The translations under genes were made by a program, and so were the position numbers. A DNA stretch of 61,581 nt, the filler included, from Sluysia triapertura (lineage: Eukaryota): NCBI GenBank assembly GCA_046118255.1. It is 4 parts of 4 records of this genome, joined end to end, with 100 filler letters (N's around TTAATTAATTAA, not from the genome) between each part and the next. Parts side by side here need not be neighbours in the genome. Positions count along the whole stretch, not along the records: positions 46,435 to 61,581 come from JBJNIA010237775.1; 3 more parts are not named here. One strand, 5' to 3'. Position 1 is the stretch's first letter; each line of letters starts with the position of its first letter. The notes beneath the pieces are model-generated. The model worked only from the letters and a program-made list of their open reading frames with translations. It was not told where the DNA came from and made no database searches. Shown here one piece after another: positions 50,296 to 61,581 of the stretch.

Positions 50296-53200
50296 GATTC
50301 GGTCTCCTCGAATCAGGAAGTGTCCGAAGTAGAAATGAAGTCAACATAATGATGAAAAATGTAATTGATGTTATATTGGGAGGTGTATCATACTGGATGT
50401 TTGGATACGGCCTTAGTTTCGGTACCGATTCAGGAAGCAATGGTTTTATTGGAGTTGGCGATTTTCTGGTTTCTAAACCACAAGGAGTAAATTTAGATTG
50501 TGTAGAAATAATAGTAAATTCTTTTTATATGATACACAGTATAGCAGATCTCTTTTTATCGCATTATTTTAATTGAAGTAGCTCCATTTTTGATATTTAA
50601 GTGGAACTACTTCAGTATTGTATTATATTACACTATACCATTTATCATATCCTTACTATTTTGTCATTTTTATTTTTAAGGCTAATTATCAAAATAGTCT
50701 CTTCTATTTTAACTTTATTTGTCATTATTTAACTCGCAATCAAATTCATGAACATTTCCGATTCAAAAATAACAATGTTTCATTGTAGTAAATAAAGAAA
50801 TAATTTCGAATGTTTGTGCTTGTAGGACCCAGATGTGGGCATTCTTTACACAAACTTCGTCTACCAATTAAGTTTTGCAACAACTGCTACTACCATCGTG
50901 AGTGGATCAATGGCGGAGCGTACAAAATTCAGTTCTTATATTGTCTTCTCATTTTTCAATACCGTCATTTACTCATTGCCTGCTAGATGGCTCTGGTCTC
51001 CAATGGGATTTCTGTACAAACTGGGTGCTCTTGACATAGCAGGTTTAAAATAATTTTTATTGTCAACCAATTGATAATCAATTTATATTTATACATCAAA
51101 GCAATTTTAACTAAAGAAACTACGACTAATTCTAAACTAACAAATAATATAAGAACCATCGTCACGACTGATAGAGACTAATTAGAAATTAATTTAATTA
51201 ATATAAATTTACCATAATTCCCATTATAACAATACTAATTTGGAGTCATAGTATGTGATTATGGAAGTCATGTATGCACATTCTTCTAATTCATGTGTGT
51301 TTGTGTGTCGATGAGTCACTGGGTATTTTCTCGAATTGGATTTGTGCATTCATGGTAAAACAAAATGAAAATAGAAAATGATTTGTTACACTGTTTCAAT
51401 ATGATGCCTTTGTTCTTTTATCTGTGCGTGTTTAGTGGACAAAATGTACTAATCCTAATAATTAATGAAATATTTACTGAATACCCAGTATTAGTGTTTC
51501 TAGTATCATCATCGAATATAATTTAGTATTAGTACTCATTGAGGACGCATTATGTGAATTCGTATGTTTTTCATTACGCATTATTAAAATAAAGAGTGAG
51601 AATTCAAAATTCCGTTTGAAACTAGCTATATTCATAAATGTCAAAAATATACGTTTTACCAATTATAAATTATTTTGAAATGATGAAAATTCGAGAATTA
51701 AGGTTTTATATTACAAATGTTTTCGTCTAGGATCGGGAGCGGTGCATCTACTAGGTGGAGTTTCAGCATTTGTCTGTGCTTGGATGCTCGGGCCTAGAGT
51801 TGGAAGATTCGAAGAAAATAATTTCGACGAAATCAATCCAACAAATACTGTGGTTGGACTATTCATGTTGTGGTATGATCTATATTTAGTAGCCTGAGAT
51901 AATATTTAGGTGGGGATGGTTAGCTTTCAATGGTTCCGGTTCAGTTGGGATTAGTGGTGGTAAATGGGTATTAGCGACCAAGTTCGTGTGATGTGAATTT
52001 TTTATATAAAATAAATAATATTAATAATGATATAAAACCTGTTATTGAAAACGAGATATGAAATTTTGATATTTCTATTACAAAACCGAGTTTGAAAACG
52101 ATCCATTGACGAATGAGTGTGACTTGACTATTATAAACCTTATTTTATTTTAAAAATACATTCGATTTGAATGAAACTTCTTAGTTTTTGTTATTTGTGG
52201 TTTTTTGTCTTTCATAATTTTATATCGAATTTCGATAAAATCAGAATTGCTTTATTACATTTATAAGAGACAATAGAAAATGTTTGTGATTGTGCTCCAG
52301 GTGTGGGTATTCTTTACACAATTTTTTACTCCACTTGTGTACATTTATTTGTTAGTGTCTGTATAGATTGAAAAATTTTCGTGTATATTTTGATCAATTT
52401 TACGACATTAGCAAATTTTAATTTCAAAGATCACGTCTTAAATGAATAATAATTTATTTAAAGTTTAATCCAACCAGTTTGACGTAAATTGAAAGATTAT
52501 TCATTTGATATTTTTGAAATAGTAAAGCAGAATTGTGGATTGTGATGTACGAATATGATATGTCAAAGAAACAATAAAATAATAATTCAATAACGGAAAT
52601 AATAAGCTTAATACCTTTAGAAAAATTAATTATTTTTAATAATATGTGAAATGCCTTTAGAGAAAATTAATTATAAAATTATAATGTTAAAAAGATTTAA
52701 TTATAAAAGATTAGTCAACACGAGACTCCAGTTATACAAATTTCGTAAGATTTAGTTTACATAATTATTTCATAAGAATTATATTTGGGAAATATATATT
52801 ACTCGGAAATTTTAACATTTTTGAAACAATTTATTGAAATTACAAATAAAAGGTTACTTGCCTTATTATTCAAAGATTAATAAGGAACTTCATCATGGTT
52901 ACATTTAAATTTTAAAAAAATAAAAACCCTGTAACTGTGTCTTCCATAGGTAGAATATAAACGTTGATTACAAATGAACTCATAAAAATAGATTCATATT
53001 TGCTAACTTTCAAGAAAAACACTAACAGATGTAATATAAATGGTGTGATATAATGATATAAAGTAATATGGAATAATACAGTGGTAGCCAAACATTGCAA
53101 ACTTAATCCAACATACTTCACATAAAATCATATTCCATAACACTAACTATTTTCCATTAAAACTTTTTTATATTTTATTTCTTTCAGATCCACTAAAACC

Positions 53201-56200
53201 ATTTTTATATCTCAAAACACTTAAGTTCACAAGTTTTCAACATCCCAAACGTACCTTCAGTTAAAACCATCAATTTAACTTTAAAAATTCATTTAAAACA
53301 TTTCATTCATTATCCTTTGACATTAGAATCACAATTACATCTCAAATTATCAAATTTACGTCTTAAAATTTAATTCAAAATGTTTCAAGTTTACAATCAT
53401 TAACACTCAATCTCTAATACCATTGAAGACATTAAATTAATACTCTGACATTGCAAGCAAATTACTACTTCTTTAACATCTTCAATTACATATTACTTTC
53501 TTCAATCATTCTTCCATCAATTCTCGCTACATTATATATCTCAGTAATTATTAAATAAAGTTTCTGTTAAAAATTTTAATATGTCCAGAACAAGAAAGAT
53601 TGCGTTTTTGTTATTTTTAAAAGATGTGTCTTTATATTATTATCATTTGAACAATTTTTATTATCATCACCATTTTGATTATTATTGTTTCGGACACTTG
53701 ATTATTTTAATCATTATTATTTGGTCTCATTATTGCAATATTAAACACATTCTAGTAATTGCCAGCGGTTGACAGTTAATAAACAAAGTAGAATCAATAG
53801 TACATACTGTCAACCACTGACAGCTGGTTATCGTAATTACTAATTCTGTGCTTCCATTGGTCGTCCAACAAGAATTAACATTGCTGTCTTGTCTTACTTT
53901 CTGGTTAAACAACCAATGATGGTTGCACAGTTAACATCATAGCAGTGTTGCGGATTAATATTCATTAGGGAGCTATTTTTAGAATTATGACAGCCAACAT
54001 TTTGTAAAAATTTTTATTGATTAAACTTAACATATTTAGAATTTAATTTTATGATCAGATGTTGAAAAATAAAAATGAACTTAGAACTACAGTAGTAACT
54101 GATGAAATCATTGATGTAGTTCAAGAATAACGTAAAAAATTAAAGAATTCTATTGTTATTAAAAGAGAAGTGATGTAGATGGGTTATTAATAGAAAATTT
54201 TGAATTTATTGAGCAAGAATCGGCAAAATTATGACAAATTCGTGATCTAAAACCTTTTATAGAAAAAGTTCGTTTTCTTAAATTTTATATTGGACGTAAT
54301 TATGTTGAAATTAAAAACAAAAATAAATTATACCGTGGTTATGTAAAATTATTAAATCATGCTATAAAACGTCGATATGTGTTTAACTGGACTCCATTAC
54401 AACAAAATTTTTGCGTGAAAGATGAAAATGAATTAACAAATATTCTTTACATGGGTGATGAGCATGACGTAAAATTTGTTGAAGAATTATTAAATAATTA
54501 CGATGGTAAATTGTACGGAAACTTTCCTTTTAATTTTGCTGAAAGATTATTTAGTGATTTATTGAAGAATCTTAATGATAATCACCATTGGAAAAATCAT
54601 TAAATTGTAAAGTATTAGATGAAAGTTCTACTGCATGTCCAACTATAATACATAAAATTGTTGCAGAGGTGGTTATGACAAATTAATAAATCGTAATTTG
54701 GATATTTTGAATTCTAATGAACACGTTGCAGACAAAGTTACACCGAATTTTGATAATGAGTCAGAAATTTAAAGATAACATAAAAGTAACAAATTCCAAA
54801 GTAAGTAGTAAAACATTAGGGCATAGCCGTGGTGAAATAATTCATACATTCCGATCATTAATCTGTCGTCGCTGCTTTAAGTACGATTATATTATGCATC
54901 CATACAGATGATCAATTTCAATGTATAATAAGCCATCCTATTCTAATACAGTTATAGTCATCATTAATCGACAAAAGCCGGACTTCGACACGACAATGTA
55001 TTAATACATAACGAAAGTGAAATTAGTAACTGTGAACTGAATTTAAATAATATGTCCAAGATCGTAAATATTCTTGGTTGGATGTCAGACTTGACAGATT
55101 ACCATCGGAGGATCCATGAACTGGTATTAATCTTGATGGCAGTTCCCGCTTACAATAGCAACGATTATGATTCAAAAGTAATTCTGATTTTTAATTCTGT
55201 CTACATGTTTACTACTATAACTATTCATTTATATGCTTTATTTTTCTTTAAGAGTTTAGAAAAACTGTTGCCGAGACATGCTCAGAAAATGATTAACGTG
55301 GAAAAGAGTTTAAATATAAATGTCAGAAATTTTTTAAATATAAATAAAATATATGTTAATTTTCTTTGTTGCTTGGTTGATTATATTACAGAGTTAAATT
55401 TAATTAAACATATTAAAGATTTTATAAACTTTGAACTTTTTATAATATTAAAAATAAATTATGTGAAAAAATTAGTTAACAAATATAGATGAAATTTAAA
55501 ATTAAAAATTTTAAATAGTAAATTTCAGTTAATACCACAACATTTTTAGAGTTTCAGAAATTGAAATATTCCGAATTAAAATCAATATTTCACAGTGAAA
55601 GCTGTTACTTTCTAATTTTATGGAATCATGTAGTGTGCACATCACTTGATGTTTTTAGAAGAACCACATATTCTGGCCATTGAGAAATAGCGAACTGAAA
55701 CTAGAAAGCATCTCCTATTCTTATCTTATTGATAATGCTTCAATAAGAATAAATAGATCGAAGAATTAGAACTAACTTCCGTAATTTTCCGTTGATCGAA
55801 CATGTTGAAACTTATGAATTAATGATTATTGTCAAAAAATATTTCTCAAATCATCCGAAAGACCTCATTTCTAGAAGCAGGGAAGACCTGGCAAGCAGGT
55901 GGAGGAAGTTATGTTTTGCTAAATTATTGTGAAATAGGGTATTAGACCTACTACTTAATGAACATACTGTAAAAGGTGTCAGAACTGAGAAGTTTACTAA
56001 GATTGACTGTGAAAATATCGATTGATTAATTTGCACGTTTTAATTTGAACACTTACTCATTTTCCAAATGTTTATCGCAGGCTTGCGACGTGGAGATTGA
56101 AGATGTTCTTGATTCAACATTGAATGTGATACCTTTTGAATTTTAATAAAGTAAGAAATATTGATATAATAAAATTTTATTTCTTTGTTATTTCATTTAT

Positions 56201-59200
56201 TCAGAGCCGTGTTAAATACCTTGAACGCTTCGTTTGGTGCTGGATGTTCGGGGATTCTTGTGACGTGAGTATTTTATTATTTTTATTGAATGCCTTAAAA
56301 ATAGAATAATAAAATTTTAATGAGGAATTTAATAAGGAATTATTGTTANNNNNNNNNNNNNNNNNNNNNNNNNNNNNNNNNNNNNNNNNNNNNNNNNNNN
56401 NNNNNNNNNNNNNNNNNNNNNNNNNNNNNNNNNNNNNNNNNNNNNNNNNNNNNNNNNNNNNNNNNNNNNNNNNNNNNNNNNNNNNNNNNNNNNNNNNNNN
56501 NNNNATAATGATAAACATTAGAGGCAATACACATTAATTTACGAAGATAAAATGTGAATTAACACTTGTCTTGGATTCACACAATTATAAATATTATTCT
56601 CAAAGGGTTCGCCTATAATCCCACGATTGTTATCTTATGGAAGACACGGTCATAGGATTTAGTTCAAATACTTCTTCAGTGAGAGTATTGTTTATTAATT
56701 TCAATCCTTAATTTATCTTATCGTATTTTCTTTTATACAATTGATTTCATTAATTCTAAACAAATAATTCTTCTTAACAATTGACGAATAATTAGCAACA
56801 GGCAAGTTATTTAACAGATAAACACAAAAATTATTATGAATCGATTAACAAAATAAGATTTAAATTTAATCAGTTTACTTTAATAATTCTTTGAAAGGTA
56901 GTTAGCTATTTTCTATGTCGATAAATTTTCATTTAAAAGCGAAGTTAATCAATAAAAGTTTAATAAACACAACAATCATATTATTTGCAAAAATAATAAT
57001 TAATAAAATGGATACTAAGGTGTGGTGGCCCGGCCCACACCTATCTACGTATCATATAAATCATAACGATCATCTACACAAACCTCATCACAAAAAATAC
57101 ATTATAACAAATCTTATCCACATCACTCGCAACATCACACCACTCATCCTTACAAAATTTCAAACCTCTAATAAAAATTATTTTATTAAACTCAGTGTTC
57201 ATTGTCATTTTGTCATCACTATGACACACTATCCTTTTTATTGTGTCTCCCAATTTTTCATTTTTATCTTTTTACGATTTATTCTTGTTAAAGTGCAATT
57301 AGTCATATTACTATTGTTAAAGATCGTATTCAATCTCCTTATTGAATGTTTTATTTAATTTCAATTATTGAATAGTTCCCGCTTTAAAATTTGCAGCAGC
57401 TTCAGAAAGAAAAATGGATAAATGAATTGAAGAAGTTAAATTATCAATGATTTTATCTAAAAATAAATAACTCAATCGAATCAACACGTCAAGTAGTAAT
57501 TATAGTGACGTCGAAATTTGAACAATTAGTACTAAAACAAGATGAGATTGTGAAAATAATTGAAGAACAGAAACTGATACCATCAAACGATATAATACGT
57601 TTTATTAGAATGGAACTTCAAAAGTCTTTAGTTATTGTTAAAGAGTTTTAAAATTTGTACATAGTAGAAAAACATTCTTTGAAATTATCCCCAATATAGA
57701 ACAGAAATCTTTTAATTGGAAATGCCGAAAATAGTAAATAAATTCAATGTATATGTCAGTTTAATTCTTTTAATCCACAGCTAGACATAAATTCGAACTT
57801 TAACTTAAATGGAGATATGATCGTCAATGTCATTAATCTTACTATTATTTCTTTAGTGATAGAATATAATATTTCAAAATTCAGTTATTTGGATTTGAAT
57901 TTTTTGGACATTTCAGTTTATTTTATTAAGGTTAAACACTAAAATAATTACAACGAAATATTACTTTACAAATAATTTACTTTTAGTGCTACCAATAATA
58001 TTTTATTGACAAGATTTCATTAGTTATTATTTTGGCAAATAAAAATTGTCGTTTAAATATTAAGTTGATAAAATGCAAAAAAAAATTTGAAATAATTTAA
58101 AAATATTAAACTGCTGCTGATGATGAAGATATAATTCCAAATTTGAAGTAAAACATTGAAAAATTCGTACGAAAAGTTTTGAAAGATTGAAATGACTGAA
58201 ACAGTAACATATAATCCTAGAATTCACGAAACATGGAATTTTACATCGGTTGATTCTGGTTCAAGTGAACATCAGTTTTTTACGAATGCTACTTCGAGTA
58301 AATTTAGCGGATTTTCAAATGATATAAGTAGTACTTTCGATGAAATTAATCAACAGACAAAAATTCTCAACGATTTTCATCAGATTTTAATCGTACTTCA
58401 TTGCTTCTGAAAATTCGTACAGACACGCCTATATTTAAAATACCATTTAAGGAAAATGATACGCATATTTTAGATGTAAGTGGTAATCAACTTTTACATG
58501 AAATCGAAATATTATCAAAAGGTAGACATCCATACATTGCTCGGTGTTACCGAACTTGGATTGAATTTCAATCAGTTGTAAAACAATAAAAAATCCTTTT
58601 GGGTATTCTATTTATGATCACATTAAAAACTGTTTAAAATAAAGCTTCACTTGTGAAATTAAAGAAGTATTTGTAATAAAAATGATTTCTAATATTCTGT
58701 CAGCTATATATTATTTATTTGATAATGCTATTAATGTTAAAAACATTTGGGTACAAACATATATAATTGTGAATTCATGTCTAAGATTAGAAATAACAAT
58801 TTTGTTATTTTTGTTTTATATAATTTTGAAAATGCACTAACCAATTTTGAAGACAAACAATGTTATATTAAATAAGGATATATTTGAATTTATATTTCCA
58901 CAAAAAGTCAGTTTTAATTTTAATTTAAGTCTCGAAGTTTTAATTCAAAATGTTATATCTCAAAGTACAAGGACCACTTTGAAAGCTGTAAAGCTTATTA
59001 ATCTTAACTCTATTTTAAGTCTTAAAGTTTTAATTTAAATTTTAAAGTTTTCGATTTTAAATATATTTTAATCTTTAAGGTTTATGAAGGCCTTTGTATC
59101 GATTTCAGATTAAAGTATACTGATAAATTGAGTAGTATACTGATCTTAAAATTTTATAAAGTTAAATAAGTTAATTCGAATAATATTAATAGCTTTAGAG

Positions 59201-60694
59201 AGATTGTGTATTTAAATTTTAAAAGTTACAGGCAGTATACTTATTATATTGAATATTTCCTATCATTTATTTTCGTAAACCTCGTTACATGGTTTTGAAA
59301 TACATTTCTCCTTGTGCAACAGTTTCATACTACGTTAACATATATGTACTAGAGAATGATAGAATCTTGGATCACCTGTATTTGGAAAATCGGAATGGTA
59401 CCAAAGAACTTGAANNNNNNNNNNNNNNNNNNNNNNNNNNNNNNNNNNNNNNNNNNNNNNNNNNNNNNNNNNNNNNNNNNNNNNNNNNNNNNNNNNNNNN
59501 NNNNNNNNNNNNNNNNNNNNNNNNNNNNNNNNNNNNNNNNNNNNNNNNNNNNNNNNNNNNNNNNNNNNNNNNNNNNNNNNNNNNNNNNNNNNNNNNNNNN
59601 NNNNNNNNNNNNNNNNNNNNNNNNNNNNNNNNNNNNNNNNNNNNNNNNNNNNNNNNNNNNNNNNNNNNNNNNNNNNNNNNNNNNNNNNNNNNNNNNNNNN
59701 NNNNNNNNNNNNNNNNNNNNNNNNNNNTAATAGTAATAGTAATAAAATGATAGTAATAATGATAATAGTCATAATAATAGTAATACTACTAATAGTAATA
59801 GTAATAATAATAATATTGATAACAATAATAATAATGAATGATATTCCATTATTATGGTGGTCCTGTCGTACGAACAAATGATATTAATAAACTTTGATTT
59901 GAATTGTGTTTGTTTGCCTATATAGAAAGTAAAGAAAATAGTATATAAATGTTTTCTGTGACAGGTTCGTGATGACTCGAGGACACTACAACGTGGGCAC
60001 GATCTGCAATGCTGTATTGTGTGGACTAGTCGGTATCACAGGTATTTCATCTATTTTATTTACTTATTTGAATGATGCTCTGCAGCAGGGTGTGCGCTTG
60101 TCGAGCCCTGGGAAAGCTTCGTGATTGGGCTTATCGGCGGGACACTAGTGTCTCCAGTAGAGAAGTTGTTGGAAATAGTCCGTATAGACGATCCAGTTTC
60201 TGCAACCGCAGTCCACGGTGTTGGAGGTATTTGGGTTAGTATTTCCTTAATGAAAGAGGATTAATTCAAATTTTATTATCATGTATGCTGCTCTTTCATC
60301 ACGACTTCCAAAAGCGACGCTATCATCCTTAATTTATTAAAGATATTCTTTTGTCAGCAGTATCGTGTTACTTATCGAACGTAAATAATATTTAATAATT
60401 GTCATACGAAACGACAATTTCGTAAGAAAATTTCCAAACAACGACGACACTGTCAAGGGGTTAATAAATGACCTATTGATCTTTCAATTTGATATTTTTC
60501 AAATTCAGCAGTACTTGAAATATTTCTAATGTTCAGATATTGATAATTATCTTGAAACAATGCTTGTATTATTCATAATAATTATTATAATAATAATTAA
60601 CATTATTATTATTATCATTAATATCATTATTATTATCATTATAATTATCATAATTAGAATTATCATTATTATTATTATTATCATCAATATTGTC

Positions 60695-60725
<31 letters not shown>

Positions 60726-61429
60726 CGACCTTTTCTTAATTATTATTGGCTTGATAGCTATAATTCTTATGGCTCATGTAACCACTGCAATAATCTTAGC
60801 ATTTGGGAAAGTTTCTTAGAATGTCTCAAGAAAATCCTAGTTTTATCCAAAAAATTATCTGCATTCTGATTGGCCCAGAATACAACGACCTTGAGAATTA
60901 TAAAACTAGTGGAGTCTGCTGGGCCTTATTTATTAGCTTTTTTGACTTGTATTGTGCAGTGTCACTTGATGCGTATTATATATGTTATTATGACAATTAG
61001 ACTGTGCACACATGCGGGTGTTCGTGTCAGCATGAAGACTGTCCCTGGGTTACATTTAATGTGACATGAGACACTGAGTTTTGATGCGACTCCTTACCTT
61101 GTCCAAGGAGTAGGATCTTAAAATACTGCTGACATTGTGTATGATGTTTCTTGGAGATCTATTTCTTCCAAAAAGATGAGATAAACAAAATTAATCCAAT
61201 TCTGAAAATCTGAAAATGATTTGAGATCTGTCATATTTTATATTATCCATTTCTAAATAAGGGACTTCTGGCAGTTGGTGTGTTTTGCGATATCGATCAG
61301 CTGGAAGACATGACTCGTGGAAGTGTCGGACTGATTCATGGTGGAGGATGGCGATGTTTCGGGGTTCAGTTGCTAAGCACTGTTGCTATTATGATATGGA
61401 GTTCTCTTTCTACCTTGGTGATTTTCGGG
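50296..61429 (+). CDS. amt: Ammonium transporter (Amt family), partial multi-exon gene
   Basis: Exons 50296-50486, 50826-51042, 51731-51872, 51910-51981, 56205-56264, 59965-60041, 60086-60234, 61262-61429. Motifs GFGLLESG, MMKNVID, QLSFATTATTIVSGSMAER, DIAGSGAVHLLGG, LWWGWLAFN, GLVGITAGC, IDDPVSATAVHGVGGIWG. Confidence 0.95.
53070..53350 (+). repeat. Upstream block shared by cassettes A and B (copy B)
   Basis: Reverse-complement match to 15250-15650. Confidence 0.8.
53760..53999. repeat. Inverted-repeat array (cassette B leader)
   Basis: Stems at 53760-53776/53806-53822 (15 of 17 paired) and 53846-53930, plus a weak third at 53945-53999. Confidence 0.8.
54060..54911 (+). pseudogene. EZH2: Intronless, frameshifted Enhancer of zeste N-terminal half (no CXC or SET); cargo of cassette B, inside an Amt intron
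   Basis: VFNWTPLQQNFCVKDENELTNILYMGDE..FVEELLNNYDGKLYG and [23 protein letters not shown] match E(z)/EZH2 [43 protein letters not shown] and [22 protein letters not shown]. Confidence 0.92.
54970..55492 (+). pseudogene. Shared unknown C-terminal domain, copy B, with a candidate 75-nt intron at 55178-55252
   Basis: SNCELNLNNMSKIVNILGWMSDLTDYHRRIHELV..YNSNDYDSK|SLEKLLPRHAQKMINVEKSLNINVRNFLNINKIYVN..LIK aligns almost without gaps to copy A once GTAATT..TTTAAG is removed. Confidence 0.78.
58401..58800 (+). pseudogene. Decayed intronless protein-kinase-like (pseudokinase) fragment in an Amt intron
   Basis: LLHEIEILSKGRHPYIARCYRTWIE (subdomains III-IV), then after a frameshift GYSIYDHIK..MISNILSAIYYLFDNAINVKNI (V-VIb). 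HRD and DFG are absent. Confidence 0.6.
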
Positions 61430-61460
61430 GTTGGTAATTGAAATGAATTTTTTATGTAAA

Positions 61461-61497
<37 letters not shown>

Positions 61498-61581
61498 GTA
61501 ATAATAATAGTAATATTAGTAATAATAATAGTGTAAAGATTAAAATACATTAATTTTTGTAAATAATTTTTAATTTTCGTA

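What the first reader, a model, noticed from the sequence alone, without database searches (positions are those of the whole stretch)
53070..55492. Cassette B: SET-less Enhancer of zeste retrocopy in the same cargo slot
Seen: inside a 4.2-kb Amt intron lie the shared upstream block, the hairpin array, an intronless E(z) from about its native start through the CRRCFKYD motif, and then the shared domain where SANT2/CXC/SET would follow. Established: the E(z) N-terminal half binds EED and SUZ12, and SET is the catalytic H3K27 methyltransferase. Inference: an intact ancestor would encode a catalytically empty PRC2-binding protein, a plausible dominant-negative or retargeting anti-silencing factor for a selfish element. 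This copy is disrupted by stops and frameshifts.
Basis: partly seen in the sequence, partly recalled or inferred. Interest (0 to 1): 0.9.

Follow-up and report, generated by a model that had tools for sequence, protein, structure and literature searches.

The report
Dead intronless E(z) copy in intron
A broken, intron-free copy of the front 40% of the chromatin-silencing gene Enhancer of zeste lies inside an intron of a flatworm ammonium-transporter gene; it looks like an ordinary dead retrocopy, and nothing available here shows it was ever a working anti-silencing decoy.

Summary
The sequence observation holds. Window 54059-54956 (+) is colinear with residues 1-314 of planarian EZH (Schmidtea mediterranea and Dugesia japonica; tblastn E 9e-50). 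It starts at the native ATG, includes the MCSS motif (Pfam 38 bits, cut-off 27), and has no CXC or SET. It runs unbroken across five intron positions known from flatworm E(z) genes. It carries about 4-7 frameshifts and 1-4 in-frame stops. It lies in sense orientation in a 4247-nt Amt intron whose flanking exons are intact.

The "cassette" reading finds no support inside this piece. No transposon protein domain, LTR or TIR was found, and there is no second copy of the upstream block, the hairpins or the 3' frame. The "shared domain" is a 174-codon open frame, which is unusually long (0 of 500 null sequences reach it). It has no detectable relative, and its first third may simply be decayed E(z) sequence, though that evidence is marginal.

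The copy keeps 28 of 32 residues that are invariant in 13 orthologues. That pattern and the lesion count fit a fairly young, passively decaying processed pseudogene from a flatworm outside Dugesiidae.

Whether the flanks are shared with other cassettes, and dN/dS against the parent, cannot be tested here. The decoy function is unsupported.

The parts
51910..51959 (+). Amt exon upstream of the host intron (donor GTAAAT follows)
   Evidence: Reading; Amt profile coverage is continuous across the neighbouring exons.
51960..56206 (+). Host intron of the ammonium transporter gene, 4247 nt
   Evidence: Splice sites read. The phase fits (a split codon is completed by the next exon). The only Pfam family in the rest of the piece is Ammonium_transp.
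53060..53560 (+).
   Evidence: G 3.9%, C 20.6%, against about 13% each in the intron. No Pfam hit. No second copy in the piece.
53753..53930 (.). Two tandem imperfect hairpins of about 90 nt (53753-53842 and 53846-53930)
   Evidence: Inverted repeats with 17-20-nt arms, 80-88% complementary. RNA folding z-scores are -4.4 and -2.95 on the + strand, -4.8 and -5.7 on the - strand. No Rfam family near threshold.
53931..54058 (+). Spacer between the hairpins and the E(z) ATG; possibly the copied 5' UTR (inference)
   Evidence: No feature found. Its length is compatible with a 5' UTR. The parent UTR is not available for comparison.
54059..54956 (+). E(z)/EZH-derived intronless pseudogene fragment, parent residues 1 to about 314. 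It is broken by about 4-7 frameshifts and 1-4 in-frame stops.
   Evidence: - tblastn with S. mediterranea EZH gives 3 HSPs in 3 frames, E 9e-50.
- Frameshift-aware alignment: 134/295 identical, counts only.
- PDB EZH2/EZH1 hits at E 3e-14 and 2e-5.
- Pfam Ezh2_MCSS 38 bits, cut-off 27.
- It is continuous over the intron positions of relatives.
54957..55220 (+). Possible decayed continuation of E(z), parent about 315-385 (start of the SANT2-like region); not established
   Evidence: The colinear frameshift-aware score exceeds shuffles (5/300 with P0001, 1/300 with P0154). hhalign and phmmer are negative.
54968..55492 (+).
   Evidence: It is the longest open frame in the intron, and 0 of 500 second-order Markov nulls reach it. 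There is no Pfam, PDB, protein-database or viral-contig relative. The AlphaFold2 model is not usable, pLDDT 45. The tail has no coding-like codon-position pattern.
55440..55514 (+). A-rich tract with an AATAAA, followed by a 13-nt direct repeat whose other copy is at 53567-53579; a candidate 3' end and target-site duplication (weak)
   Evidence: two shared 13-mer positions (one overlapping repeat) against 0.3 expected from shuffles. Not significant on its own in AT-rich DNA.
56207..56266 (+). Amt exon downstream of the host intron
   Evidence: Reading; acceptor AG at 56205-56206 and donor GTGAGT at 56267.

Best explanation
This is a processed pseudogene. A transcript of the host flatworm's own Enhancer of zeste gene was reverse-transcribed and inserted, in sense orientation, into an intron of an ammonium-transporter gene.

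The copy is complete at the 5' end (native ATG, and probably some 5' UTR) and stops after the MCSS motif, or a little beyond it in the first part of the SANT2-like region. It therefore lacks CXC and SET.

It is not functional. It has accumulated several frameshifts and in-frame stops and is decaying as intron DNA.

The 3' truncation is unusual for target-primed retroposition. I think it most likely arose in one of two ways. Either a prematurely polyadenylated E(z) transcript was copied, or the reverse transcriptase began on another RNA and jumped onto an internal site of the E(z) mRNA, giving a chimeric retrocopy whose 3' part is the unexplained open frame and A-rich tail.

Shown: homology, extent, absence of introns, the lesions, the position in the Amt intron, and the absence of SET and CXC.

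Inferred: the RNA-mediated mechanism, the cause of the truncation, and 'dead on arrival'.
For: Homology and extent:
- Exhaustive HMMER search: the best hit is S. mediterranea EZH, 51% identity over 118 of 122 residues, E 1e-30.
- tblastn E 9e-50 over parent residues 35-314. The frameshift-aware alignment starts at parent residue 1 and window 54059.
- Pfam MCSS is above its cut-off. PDB hits to EZH2 residues 99-178 and 273-299.

No introns:
- A triclad genomic contig (L001) has introns at parent positions about 100 and about 180.
- Macrostomum has introns at about 11-15, 180-185 and 320-326.
- Cichlidogyrus has one at about 243-267.
- The window copy needs only 3 inserted codons in its whole alignment.

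The breaks are real and not assembly noise:
- The Amt exons in the same piece read cleanly, including a 44-nt mini-intron.

Passive decay:
- 28 of 32 columns invariant in 13 orthologues are kept. This is within the range of divergent functional orthologues.
- Codon-position periodicity is still strong, p = 3e-6.
- About 5-6% of point changes in these codons would create a stop, so 1-4 stops imply only tens of substitutions.

No carrier element:
- No transposon domains, LTRs, TIRs or repeated flanks in the piece.
Against: - A classical LINE-mediated retrocopy is complete at the 3' end and truncated at the 5' end. This copy is the reverse.
- No clean poly(A) tail or significant target-site duplication was found.
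- The parent gene of the host species was not available. 'Intronless' therefore rests on intron positions in relatives, and neutral evolution since capture could not be measured.
- The 174-codon open frame that follows is longer than chance gives and is unexplained.
I could not examine that. If true, it argues for something more organised than a solitary retrocopy.
Confidence: 0.8

Rival explanations
1. The E(z) fragment is the variable middle part of a repeated mobile or chimeric unit. A 5' module (G-poor block and/or the two-hairpin RNA) and a 3' module (the open frame plus A-rich tail) recur around different host-gene 5' halves. One route is repeated template jumps of a reverse transcriptase between abundant RNAs, giving tripartite chimeric retrocopies. 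Another is a non-autonomous element that transduces cDNA. In this version the cargo has no function.
For: - The 5'-complete, 3'-truncated shape is what an internal template jump would give.
- Stable tandem hairpins lie about 130 nt upstream of the ATG.
- The 3' frame is unusually long.
- An A-rich end with AATAAA and a candidate 13-nt flanking repeat would bound a unit at about 53580-55501.
- The next Amt intron has a superficially parallel layout: a G-poor block at 57030-57340, then a weak eIF2-alpha-kinase-like fragment at about 58190-58590.
- Double template jumps that make tripartite chimeras are documented in other organisms (PMC2104539, PMC13174262).
Against: - Inside the piece the two layouts share no detectable sequence by blastn or nhmmer.
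- There are no element proteins or terminal repeats.
- The hairpins match no RNA family.
- The 3' frame has no relative anywhere I searched.
- The flanking repeat is not significant.
- The kinase-like hit is below significance (E 0.03-0.2).
Confidence: 0.2
2. One reading: the intact ancestor encoded a SET-less protein that bound EED and SUZ12, fused to a common C-terminal domain. It acted as a dominant-negative or retargeting factor against PRC2 silencing of the element that carried it.
For: - The retained part covers the regions that in solved PRC2 structures lie N-terminal of SANT2/CXC/SET. The PDB alignments reach EZH2 residues about 99-178 and 273-299.
- Invariant residues are well kept, 28 of 32.
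- A long open frame follows.
- If the host were a dugesiid planarian, 45% identity with so few invariant residues lost would require a long period under constraint.
Against: - The copy is dead, with multiple frameshifts and stops.
- No related short protein exists in the searched collections.
- There is no evidence of an element.
- The 3' frame is now in a different frame from the last E(z) piece, and its tail is not coding-like.
- The good retention of invariant residues is explained equally well by recent copying from a divergent parent.
- Two long ORFs of the window are absent from a collection that should hold dugesiid data, which weakly argues that the host is not a dugesiid.
Confidence: 0.04
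3. It is not a retrocopy. It is either a DNA-level partial duplication of a parent gene that naturally lacks introns in its 5' half, or a live gene whose apparent breaks are assembly errors or mini-introns.
For: - This genome has very short introns (44 nt).
- The assembly has N gaps.
- The host's parent gene structure is unknown.
Against: - In-frame stops align to parent residues, and only 3 extra codons are needed in the alignment, so mini-introns do not explain the frame changes.
- The Amt exons in the same piece have no frame errors.
- Introns at about 100 and about 180 are present in the closest genomic relative, and the one at about 180 is shared with Macrostomum.
Confidence: 0.04

Closest known systems
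Processed pseudogenes (retrocopies) of host mRNAs lodged in introns of other genes (review: PMC5470649)
   Same: An intron-free copy of a multi-exon gene that is colinear with the protein, disabled by frameshifts and stops, sits in an unrelated gene's intron, and has no promoter or partner features of its own.
   Different: It keeps the 5' end and lacks the 3' 60% of the parent, the opposite of the usual 5' truncation. No clear poly(A) tail or target-site duplication is visible.
Chimeric retrogenes made by reverse-transcriptase template switching (LINE-1 chimeras with snRNAs and mRNAs; tripartite chimeras in Magnaporthe: PMC2104539, PMC13174262, PMC4476161)
   Same: It may work the same way. 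A structured small-RNA-like 5' module, a host mRNA part that reaches its own 5' end, and an unrelated 3' part ending in an A-rich tract are what two template jumps would produce.
   Different: Neither the 5' nor the 3' partner could be identified as a known RNA or LINE tail. The flanking duplication is not significant. Recurrence was not tested.
Capture of truncated cellular genes by mobile elements (retroviral oncogene transduction; Pack-MULE or Helitron gene-fragment capture).
   Same: A truncated host gene placed between non-host sequences. In the retroviral case it is also intronless and fused to an element frame.
   Different: No LTRs, TIRs, Helitron-type ends, gag/pol, transposase or Rep/helicase remnants were found in the piece.
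Known protein inhibitors of PRC2, such as EZHIP/CATACOMB and H3K27M-type pseudosubstrates. Named from general knowledge; no sequence was compared.
   Same: Only the proposed outcome is the same, namely interference with H3K27 methylation.
   Different: Those inhibitors act as pseudosubstrates in the SET active site and are unrelated to E(z). Here the proposal is subunit titration by an E(z) N-terminal half, for which this locus gives no functional evidence.

Membership tests
E(z)/EZH gene family (PRC2 catalytic subunit) | N-terminal region colinear with EZH (EED-binding region through the SANT1-like region) | tested here: met
   The best library hit is S. mediterranea EZH, E 1e-30. PDB EZH2/EZH1 hits at E 3e-14. 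The alignment starts at parent residue 1.
E(z)/EZH gene family (PRC2 catalytic subunit) | MCSS motif (Pfam PF21358) | tested here: met
   38 bits against a curated cut-off of 27. EZH2 residues 273-299 in PDB.
E(z)/EZH gene family (PRC2 catalytic subunit) | CXC (preSET) and SET domains | tested here: not met
   The six-frame Pfam scan of all open segments of 40 aa or more finds only Ammonium_transp. phmmer with the C-terminal 460 residues of two planarian EZH finds nothing in the piece.
E(z)/EZH gene family (PRC2 catalytic subunit) | Uninterrupted reading frame | tested here: not met
   About 4-7 frameshifts and 1-4 in-frame stops under six scoring schemes, also visible in the translations.
Processed pseudogene / retrocopy | Parental introns absent | tested here: met
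   The copy is continuous across positions about 11-15, 100, 180 and 243-267, which carry introns in flatworm E(z) genes. It may also be continuous across about 320-326, but the homology there is only marginal. The host's own parent gene was not available.
Processed pseudogene / retrocopy | Poly(A) tail and target-site duplication | tested here: inconclusive
   An A-rich tract with AATAAA lies at about 55440-55500, and a 13-nt direct repeat occurs at 53567 and 55502. About 0.3 such repeats are expected by chance.
Processed pseudogene / retrocopy | Contains the 3' end of the parental mRNA | tested here: not met
   Homology ends at parent residue about 314 (possibly about 385) of 777.
Processed pseudogene / retrocopy | Intron-bearing parent elsewhere in the same genome | not testable with these tools
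   Only this piece of the assembly is available. Exact look-ups of window ORFs found no record.
Gene-capturing transposable element (Pack-type DNA transposon, Helitron, LTR-element transduction) | Terminal inverted or long terminal repeats bounding the unit | tested here: not met
   Repeat search and self-blastn of the intron against the piece found only low-complexity matches and a 45-nt exon-edge duplicate.
Gene-capturing transposable element (Pack-type DNA transposon, Helitron, LTR-element transduction) | Element-encoded protein remnants (reverse transcriptase, integrase, transposase, Rep/helicase) | tested here: not met
   None among 118 open segments at E <= 0.01. A non-autonomous element would not need them.
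Gene-capturing transposable element (Pack-type DNA transposon, Helitron, LTR-element transduction) | Several copies with the same flanks and different inserts | not testable with these tools
Within the piece there is no second copy of any flank, and nothing in metagenome or viral collections.
Chimeric retrocopy by template switching | The host mRNA part reaches its own 5' end and is cut internally at its 3' side | tested here: met
   The alignment runs from parent residue 1 and ends at about 314-385.
Chimeric retrocopy by template switching | The 3' partner is identifiable as the 3' end of a LINE/SINE or another RNA | tested here: inconclusive
   The 3' frame and tail match nothing, and no flatworm repeat library is available.
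Structured small RNA gene (pre-miRNA cluster or H/ACA snoRNA), considered for the hairpins | Match to a curated RNA family | tested here: not met
   No hit at E <= 1 in the piece. In a 291-nt search the best hit is mir-4 at 22 bits against a gathering score of 70.

The most novel reading that the evidence does not exclude
A flatworm retro-element or chimeric-retrocopy family repeatedly places the 5' halves of host mRNAs between a two-hairpin 5' module and a common 3' open frame. In the E(z) case it once expressed a SET-less N-terminal half of E(z) able to bind PRC2 partners, fused to that frame and acting against Polycomb silencing. The present copy would be a dead member.
Probability: 0.05. 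Interest if true: 0.75.

Novelty: new member of a known kind. Interest (0 to 1): 0.22.

Why it matters
As it stands, this is one more dead retrocopy and matters little in itself. Two things are worth recording. First, the copy is 5'-complete and 3'-truncated. If other copies in this genome have the same shape, that points to template switching or premature polyadenylation as a common route of retrocopy formation in flatworms, whose retrocopies are hardly described: a full-text search for planarian retrocopies returned nothing. Second, if the same flanks really surround different host-gene fragments elsewhere, the genome holds a gene-fragment-shuffling element family. Only that assembly-wide finding, not this locus, would make the PRC2-decoy idea worth pursuing.

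Tried and rejected
- **Short relatives of the E(z) piece.** The 5.8-billion-protein index, which sees only proteins of 0.55-1.75 times the query length, gave none.
- **Relatives of the 3' open frame.** Pfam, PDB, the protein index and viral contigs gave none. The AlphaFold2 single-sequence model had pLDDT 45, so I ran no fold search.
- **Is the 3' frame the SANT2 part of E(z)?** Shuffle tests are suggestive, but hhalign and phmmer are negative. Left open.
- **Exact look-ups to name the host.** Two window ORFs and S. mediterranea EZH were not on record.
- **Transposon hallmarks.** None were found.
- **Homology between the two large Amt introns**, each of which has a G-poor block followed by a gene-like fragment. 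None was found.
- **Hairpins as a known RNA.** No family matched. H/ACA-like or pre-miRNA-like geometry is only a lead.
- **Metagenome scan with the hairpin-1 arms.** It gave 16 hits, all unrelated chance matches.
- **GC3 argument for great age.** Rejected. The low GC3 of the copy comes with strong codon periodicity, so it is probably inherited from the parent.


Full report
**Scope and rules.**
- I worked only on places 46435-61581.
- N runs were left as they are.
- The Amt exons were searched one by one, by reference. The joined exon model was neither built nor searched.
- Nothing here looks human.
- No repaired, joined or consensus version of the E(z) copy was made. Alignments across frameshifts were reduced to scores, counts and outer bounds.

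1. In my reasoning I twice recalled letters of human EZH2 from memory.
2. An earlier count gave the bounds of two open pieces that I used as queries, and these border on breaks.

**Setting.**
- The piece is about 26% G+C and eukaryotic.
- On the + strand lies an ammonium-transporter gene. Six open segments hit Pfam Ammonium_transp and cover profile positions 11-369 in order.
- Its exons read cleanly. A 44-nt mini-intron (60042-60085) explains the one apparent frame change.
- The finding lies in the intron 51960-56206 (4247 nt), between exons 51910-51959 and 56207-56266.

**The E(z)-like stretch is real.**
- One 122-codon open piece matches EZH2 and EZH1 chains at residues about 99-178, E 3e-14.
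- A 66-codon open piece hits Pfam Ezh2_MCSS at 38 bits (cut-off 27) and EZH2 residues 273-299.
- An exhaustive HMMER search of 1.84 billion cluster representatives gave as best hit a 777-aa protein, with 51% identity over 118 residues and E 1e-30. This protein is EZH of Schmidtea mediterranea, AFD29605.1.
- tblastn with that protein gives three HSPs in three frames covering parent residues 35-314, E 9e-50.
- Dugesia japonica EZH does equally well. Non-triclad flatworm and mollusc or annelid EZH score lower, with fewer aligned residues.
- A frameshift-aware alignment starts at parent residue 1 at window 54059, where an ATG stands. It runs to residue 314 at 54956 with about 45% identity.
- The host is therefore a flatworm whose E(z) is nearest to, but well outside, the dugesiid planarians.

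**Intron-free.**
- A triclad genomic contig (L001) shows E(z) introns after parent residues about 100 and about 180, with GT..AG borders.
- Mapping two annotated flatworm genes onto their loci puts introns at about 11-15, 180-185, 320-326 and 458-465 in Macrostomum, and at about 243-267 in Cichlidogyrus.
- The window copy is continuous over all positions up to 314. It needs only three extra codons in the whole alignment, so not even mini-introns are present.
This is the one caveat.

**Broken.**
- Under six scoring schemes the secure part has 4-7 frameshifts and 1-4 in-frame stops.
- The Amt exons in the same piece are clean, so these are not assembly noise.

**SET-less.**
- No CXC or SET occurs anywhere in the piece.

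**Where the homology ends.**
- The secure end is parent residue about 314, soon after the MCSS motif.
- A colinear continuation to about 55100-55220 (parent about 365-385) beats shuffles in 295/300 and 299/300 trials. hhalign and phmmer do not detect it.
Part of that 'domain' may therefore simply be decayed E(z). I leave this open.

**The 3' frame.**
- 54968-55492 is a 174-codon open frame. None of 500 second-order Markov nulls of the intron reaches that length (mean 84, maximum 167).
- It has no relative in Pfam, PDB, the 5.8-billion-protein index or viral contigs.
- Its model is unusable.
- Its last 130 codons lack the usual codon-position pattern.
- It remains unexplained.

**Upstream features.**
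- 53060-53560 is strikingly G-poor (3.9%) and C-rich (20.6%).
- 53753-53842 and 53846-53930 are two stable hairpins. RNA z-scores are -4.4 and -2.95 on the + strand, and -4.8 and -5.7 on the - strand.
- They match no Rfam family.
- About 130 nt separate them from the ATG.

**No carrier element is visible.**
- All 118 open segments of 40 aa or more outside the E(z) stretch were scanned. Only the Amt family appears.
- There are no LTRs or TIRs.
- The block, the hairpins and the 3' frame have no second copy in the piece.
- A 13-nt direct repeat (53567 and 55502), the latter after an A-rich tract with AATAAA, would bound a unit of about 1.9 kb. It is not significant in such AT-rich DNA.

**How long has it been dead?**
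- The copy keeps 28 of 32 columns that are invariant in 13 EZH orthologues, 20 of 27 nearly invariant columns, 26 of 56 intermediate columns and 60 of 199 variable columns.
- In a leave-one-out test, divergent functional orthologues lose as many as five invariant columns. Most of the copy's divergence from planarian EZH is therefore of the orthologue type, not decay.
- Its codon-position pattern is still strong, p = 3e-6.
- About 5-6% of single-base changes in its codons would make a stop. The 1-4 stops therefore point to some tens of substitutions, and the frameshift count fits that.
- The simplest reading is a fairly recent copy of a divergent parent that has decayed passively since.
- The alternative is an old paralogue in a dugesiid that was long constrained and recently lost. 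That would need a paralogue family, and neither protein search shows one. Two long window ORFs are also absent from a collection that should hold dugesiid reads.
- Without the parent I cannot compute dN/dS.

**Mechanism.**
- The RNA-mediated origin is inferred from the absence of introns.
- The 5'-complete, 3'-truncated shape is not that of simple target-primed retroposition.
- I favour one of two routes: a copy of a prematurely polyadenylated transcript, or a template jump onto an internal site of the E(z) mRNA. Template jumps make chimeric and even tripartite retrocopies elsewhere (PMC2104539, PMC13174262, PMC5470649).
- The second route would also explain foreign 5' and 3' modules without any 'cargo slot'.

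**Verdict.**
- The 'cassette' claim is untestable here and unsupported inside the piece.
- The decoy function is unsupported.
- This is a new member of a known kind, of low interest unless an assembly-wide survey shows recurrent flanks.

Noticed in passing
window 58190-58590 (+), with 57030-57340: The next large Amt intron (56267-59964) holds two adjacent open pieces whose best, sub-significant matches are all the N-lobe of eIF2-alpha kinases or Pkinase: Pfam E 0.026, GCN2 E 0.11, PERK E 0.24. About 0.85 kb upstream lies another G-poor, C-rich block (G 6.4%, C 23.8%). This may be a second decayed gene fragment with a layout like that of the E(z) locus, but it shares no sequence with it.
   Followed up: partly
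window 47332-49092 (+): Upstream of the first visible Amt exon lie several unusually long open frames (172 and 213 codons). The first has a coding-like codon-position pattern (p = 1e-4). None has a Pfam or PDB match. This may be an unannotated gene or an element ORF.
   Followed up: partly
window 52279-52321 versus 50809-50853: A 45-nt, 84% identical copy of the acceptor site and first bases of the Amt exon that starts at about 50835 sits inside the host intron. It is a remnant of an exon-edge duplication or a decayed alternative exon.
   Followed up: no
window 60042-60085 and 51870-51909: The Amt gene has mini-introns of about 40-44 nt beside introns of 3.7-4.2 kb. Its exons are about 39% G+C against about 25% in the introns.
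   Followed up: partly
window 46713-46800 (both strands): An AT-rich palindromic hairpin gives a weak match to the mir-8536 precursor on both strands (29.7 bits against a gathering score of 100). This is most likely chance.
   Followed up: no
window 53845-53931 (+): In a small-region search the second hairpin gives a sub-threshold match to the mir-4 precursor model (22 bits against 70). The arms share runs of bases but not the seed region. I treat it as chance.
   Followed up: partly
L001 (Logan SRR33002330), 1-1065: This genomic contig from an unnamed dugesiid-like planarian carries E(z) exons 1 and 2, separated by a 70-nt intron. Its exons are 41-45% G+C, much richer than the window copy.
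   Followed up: partly
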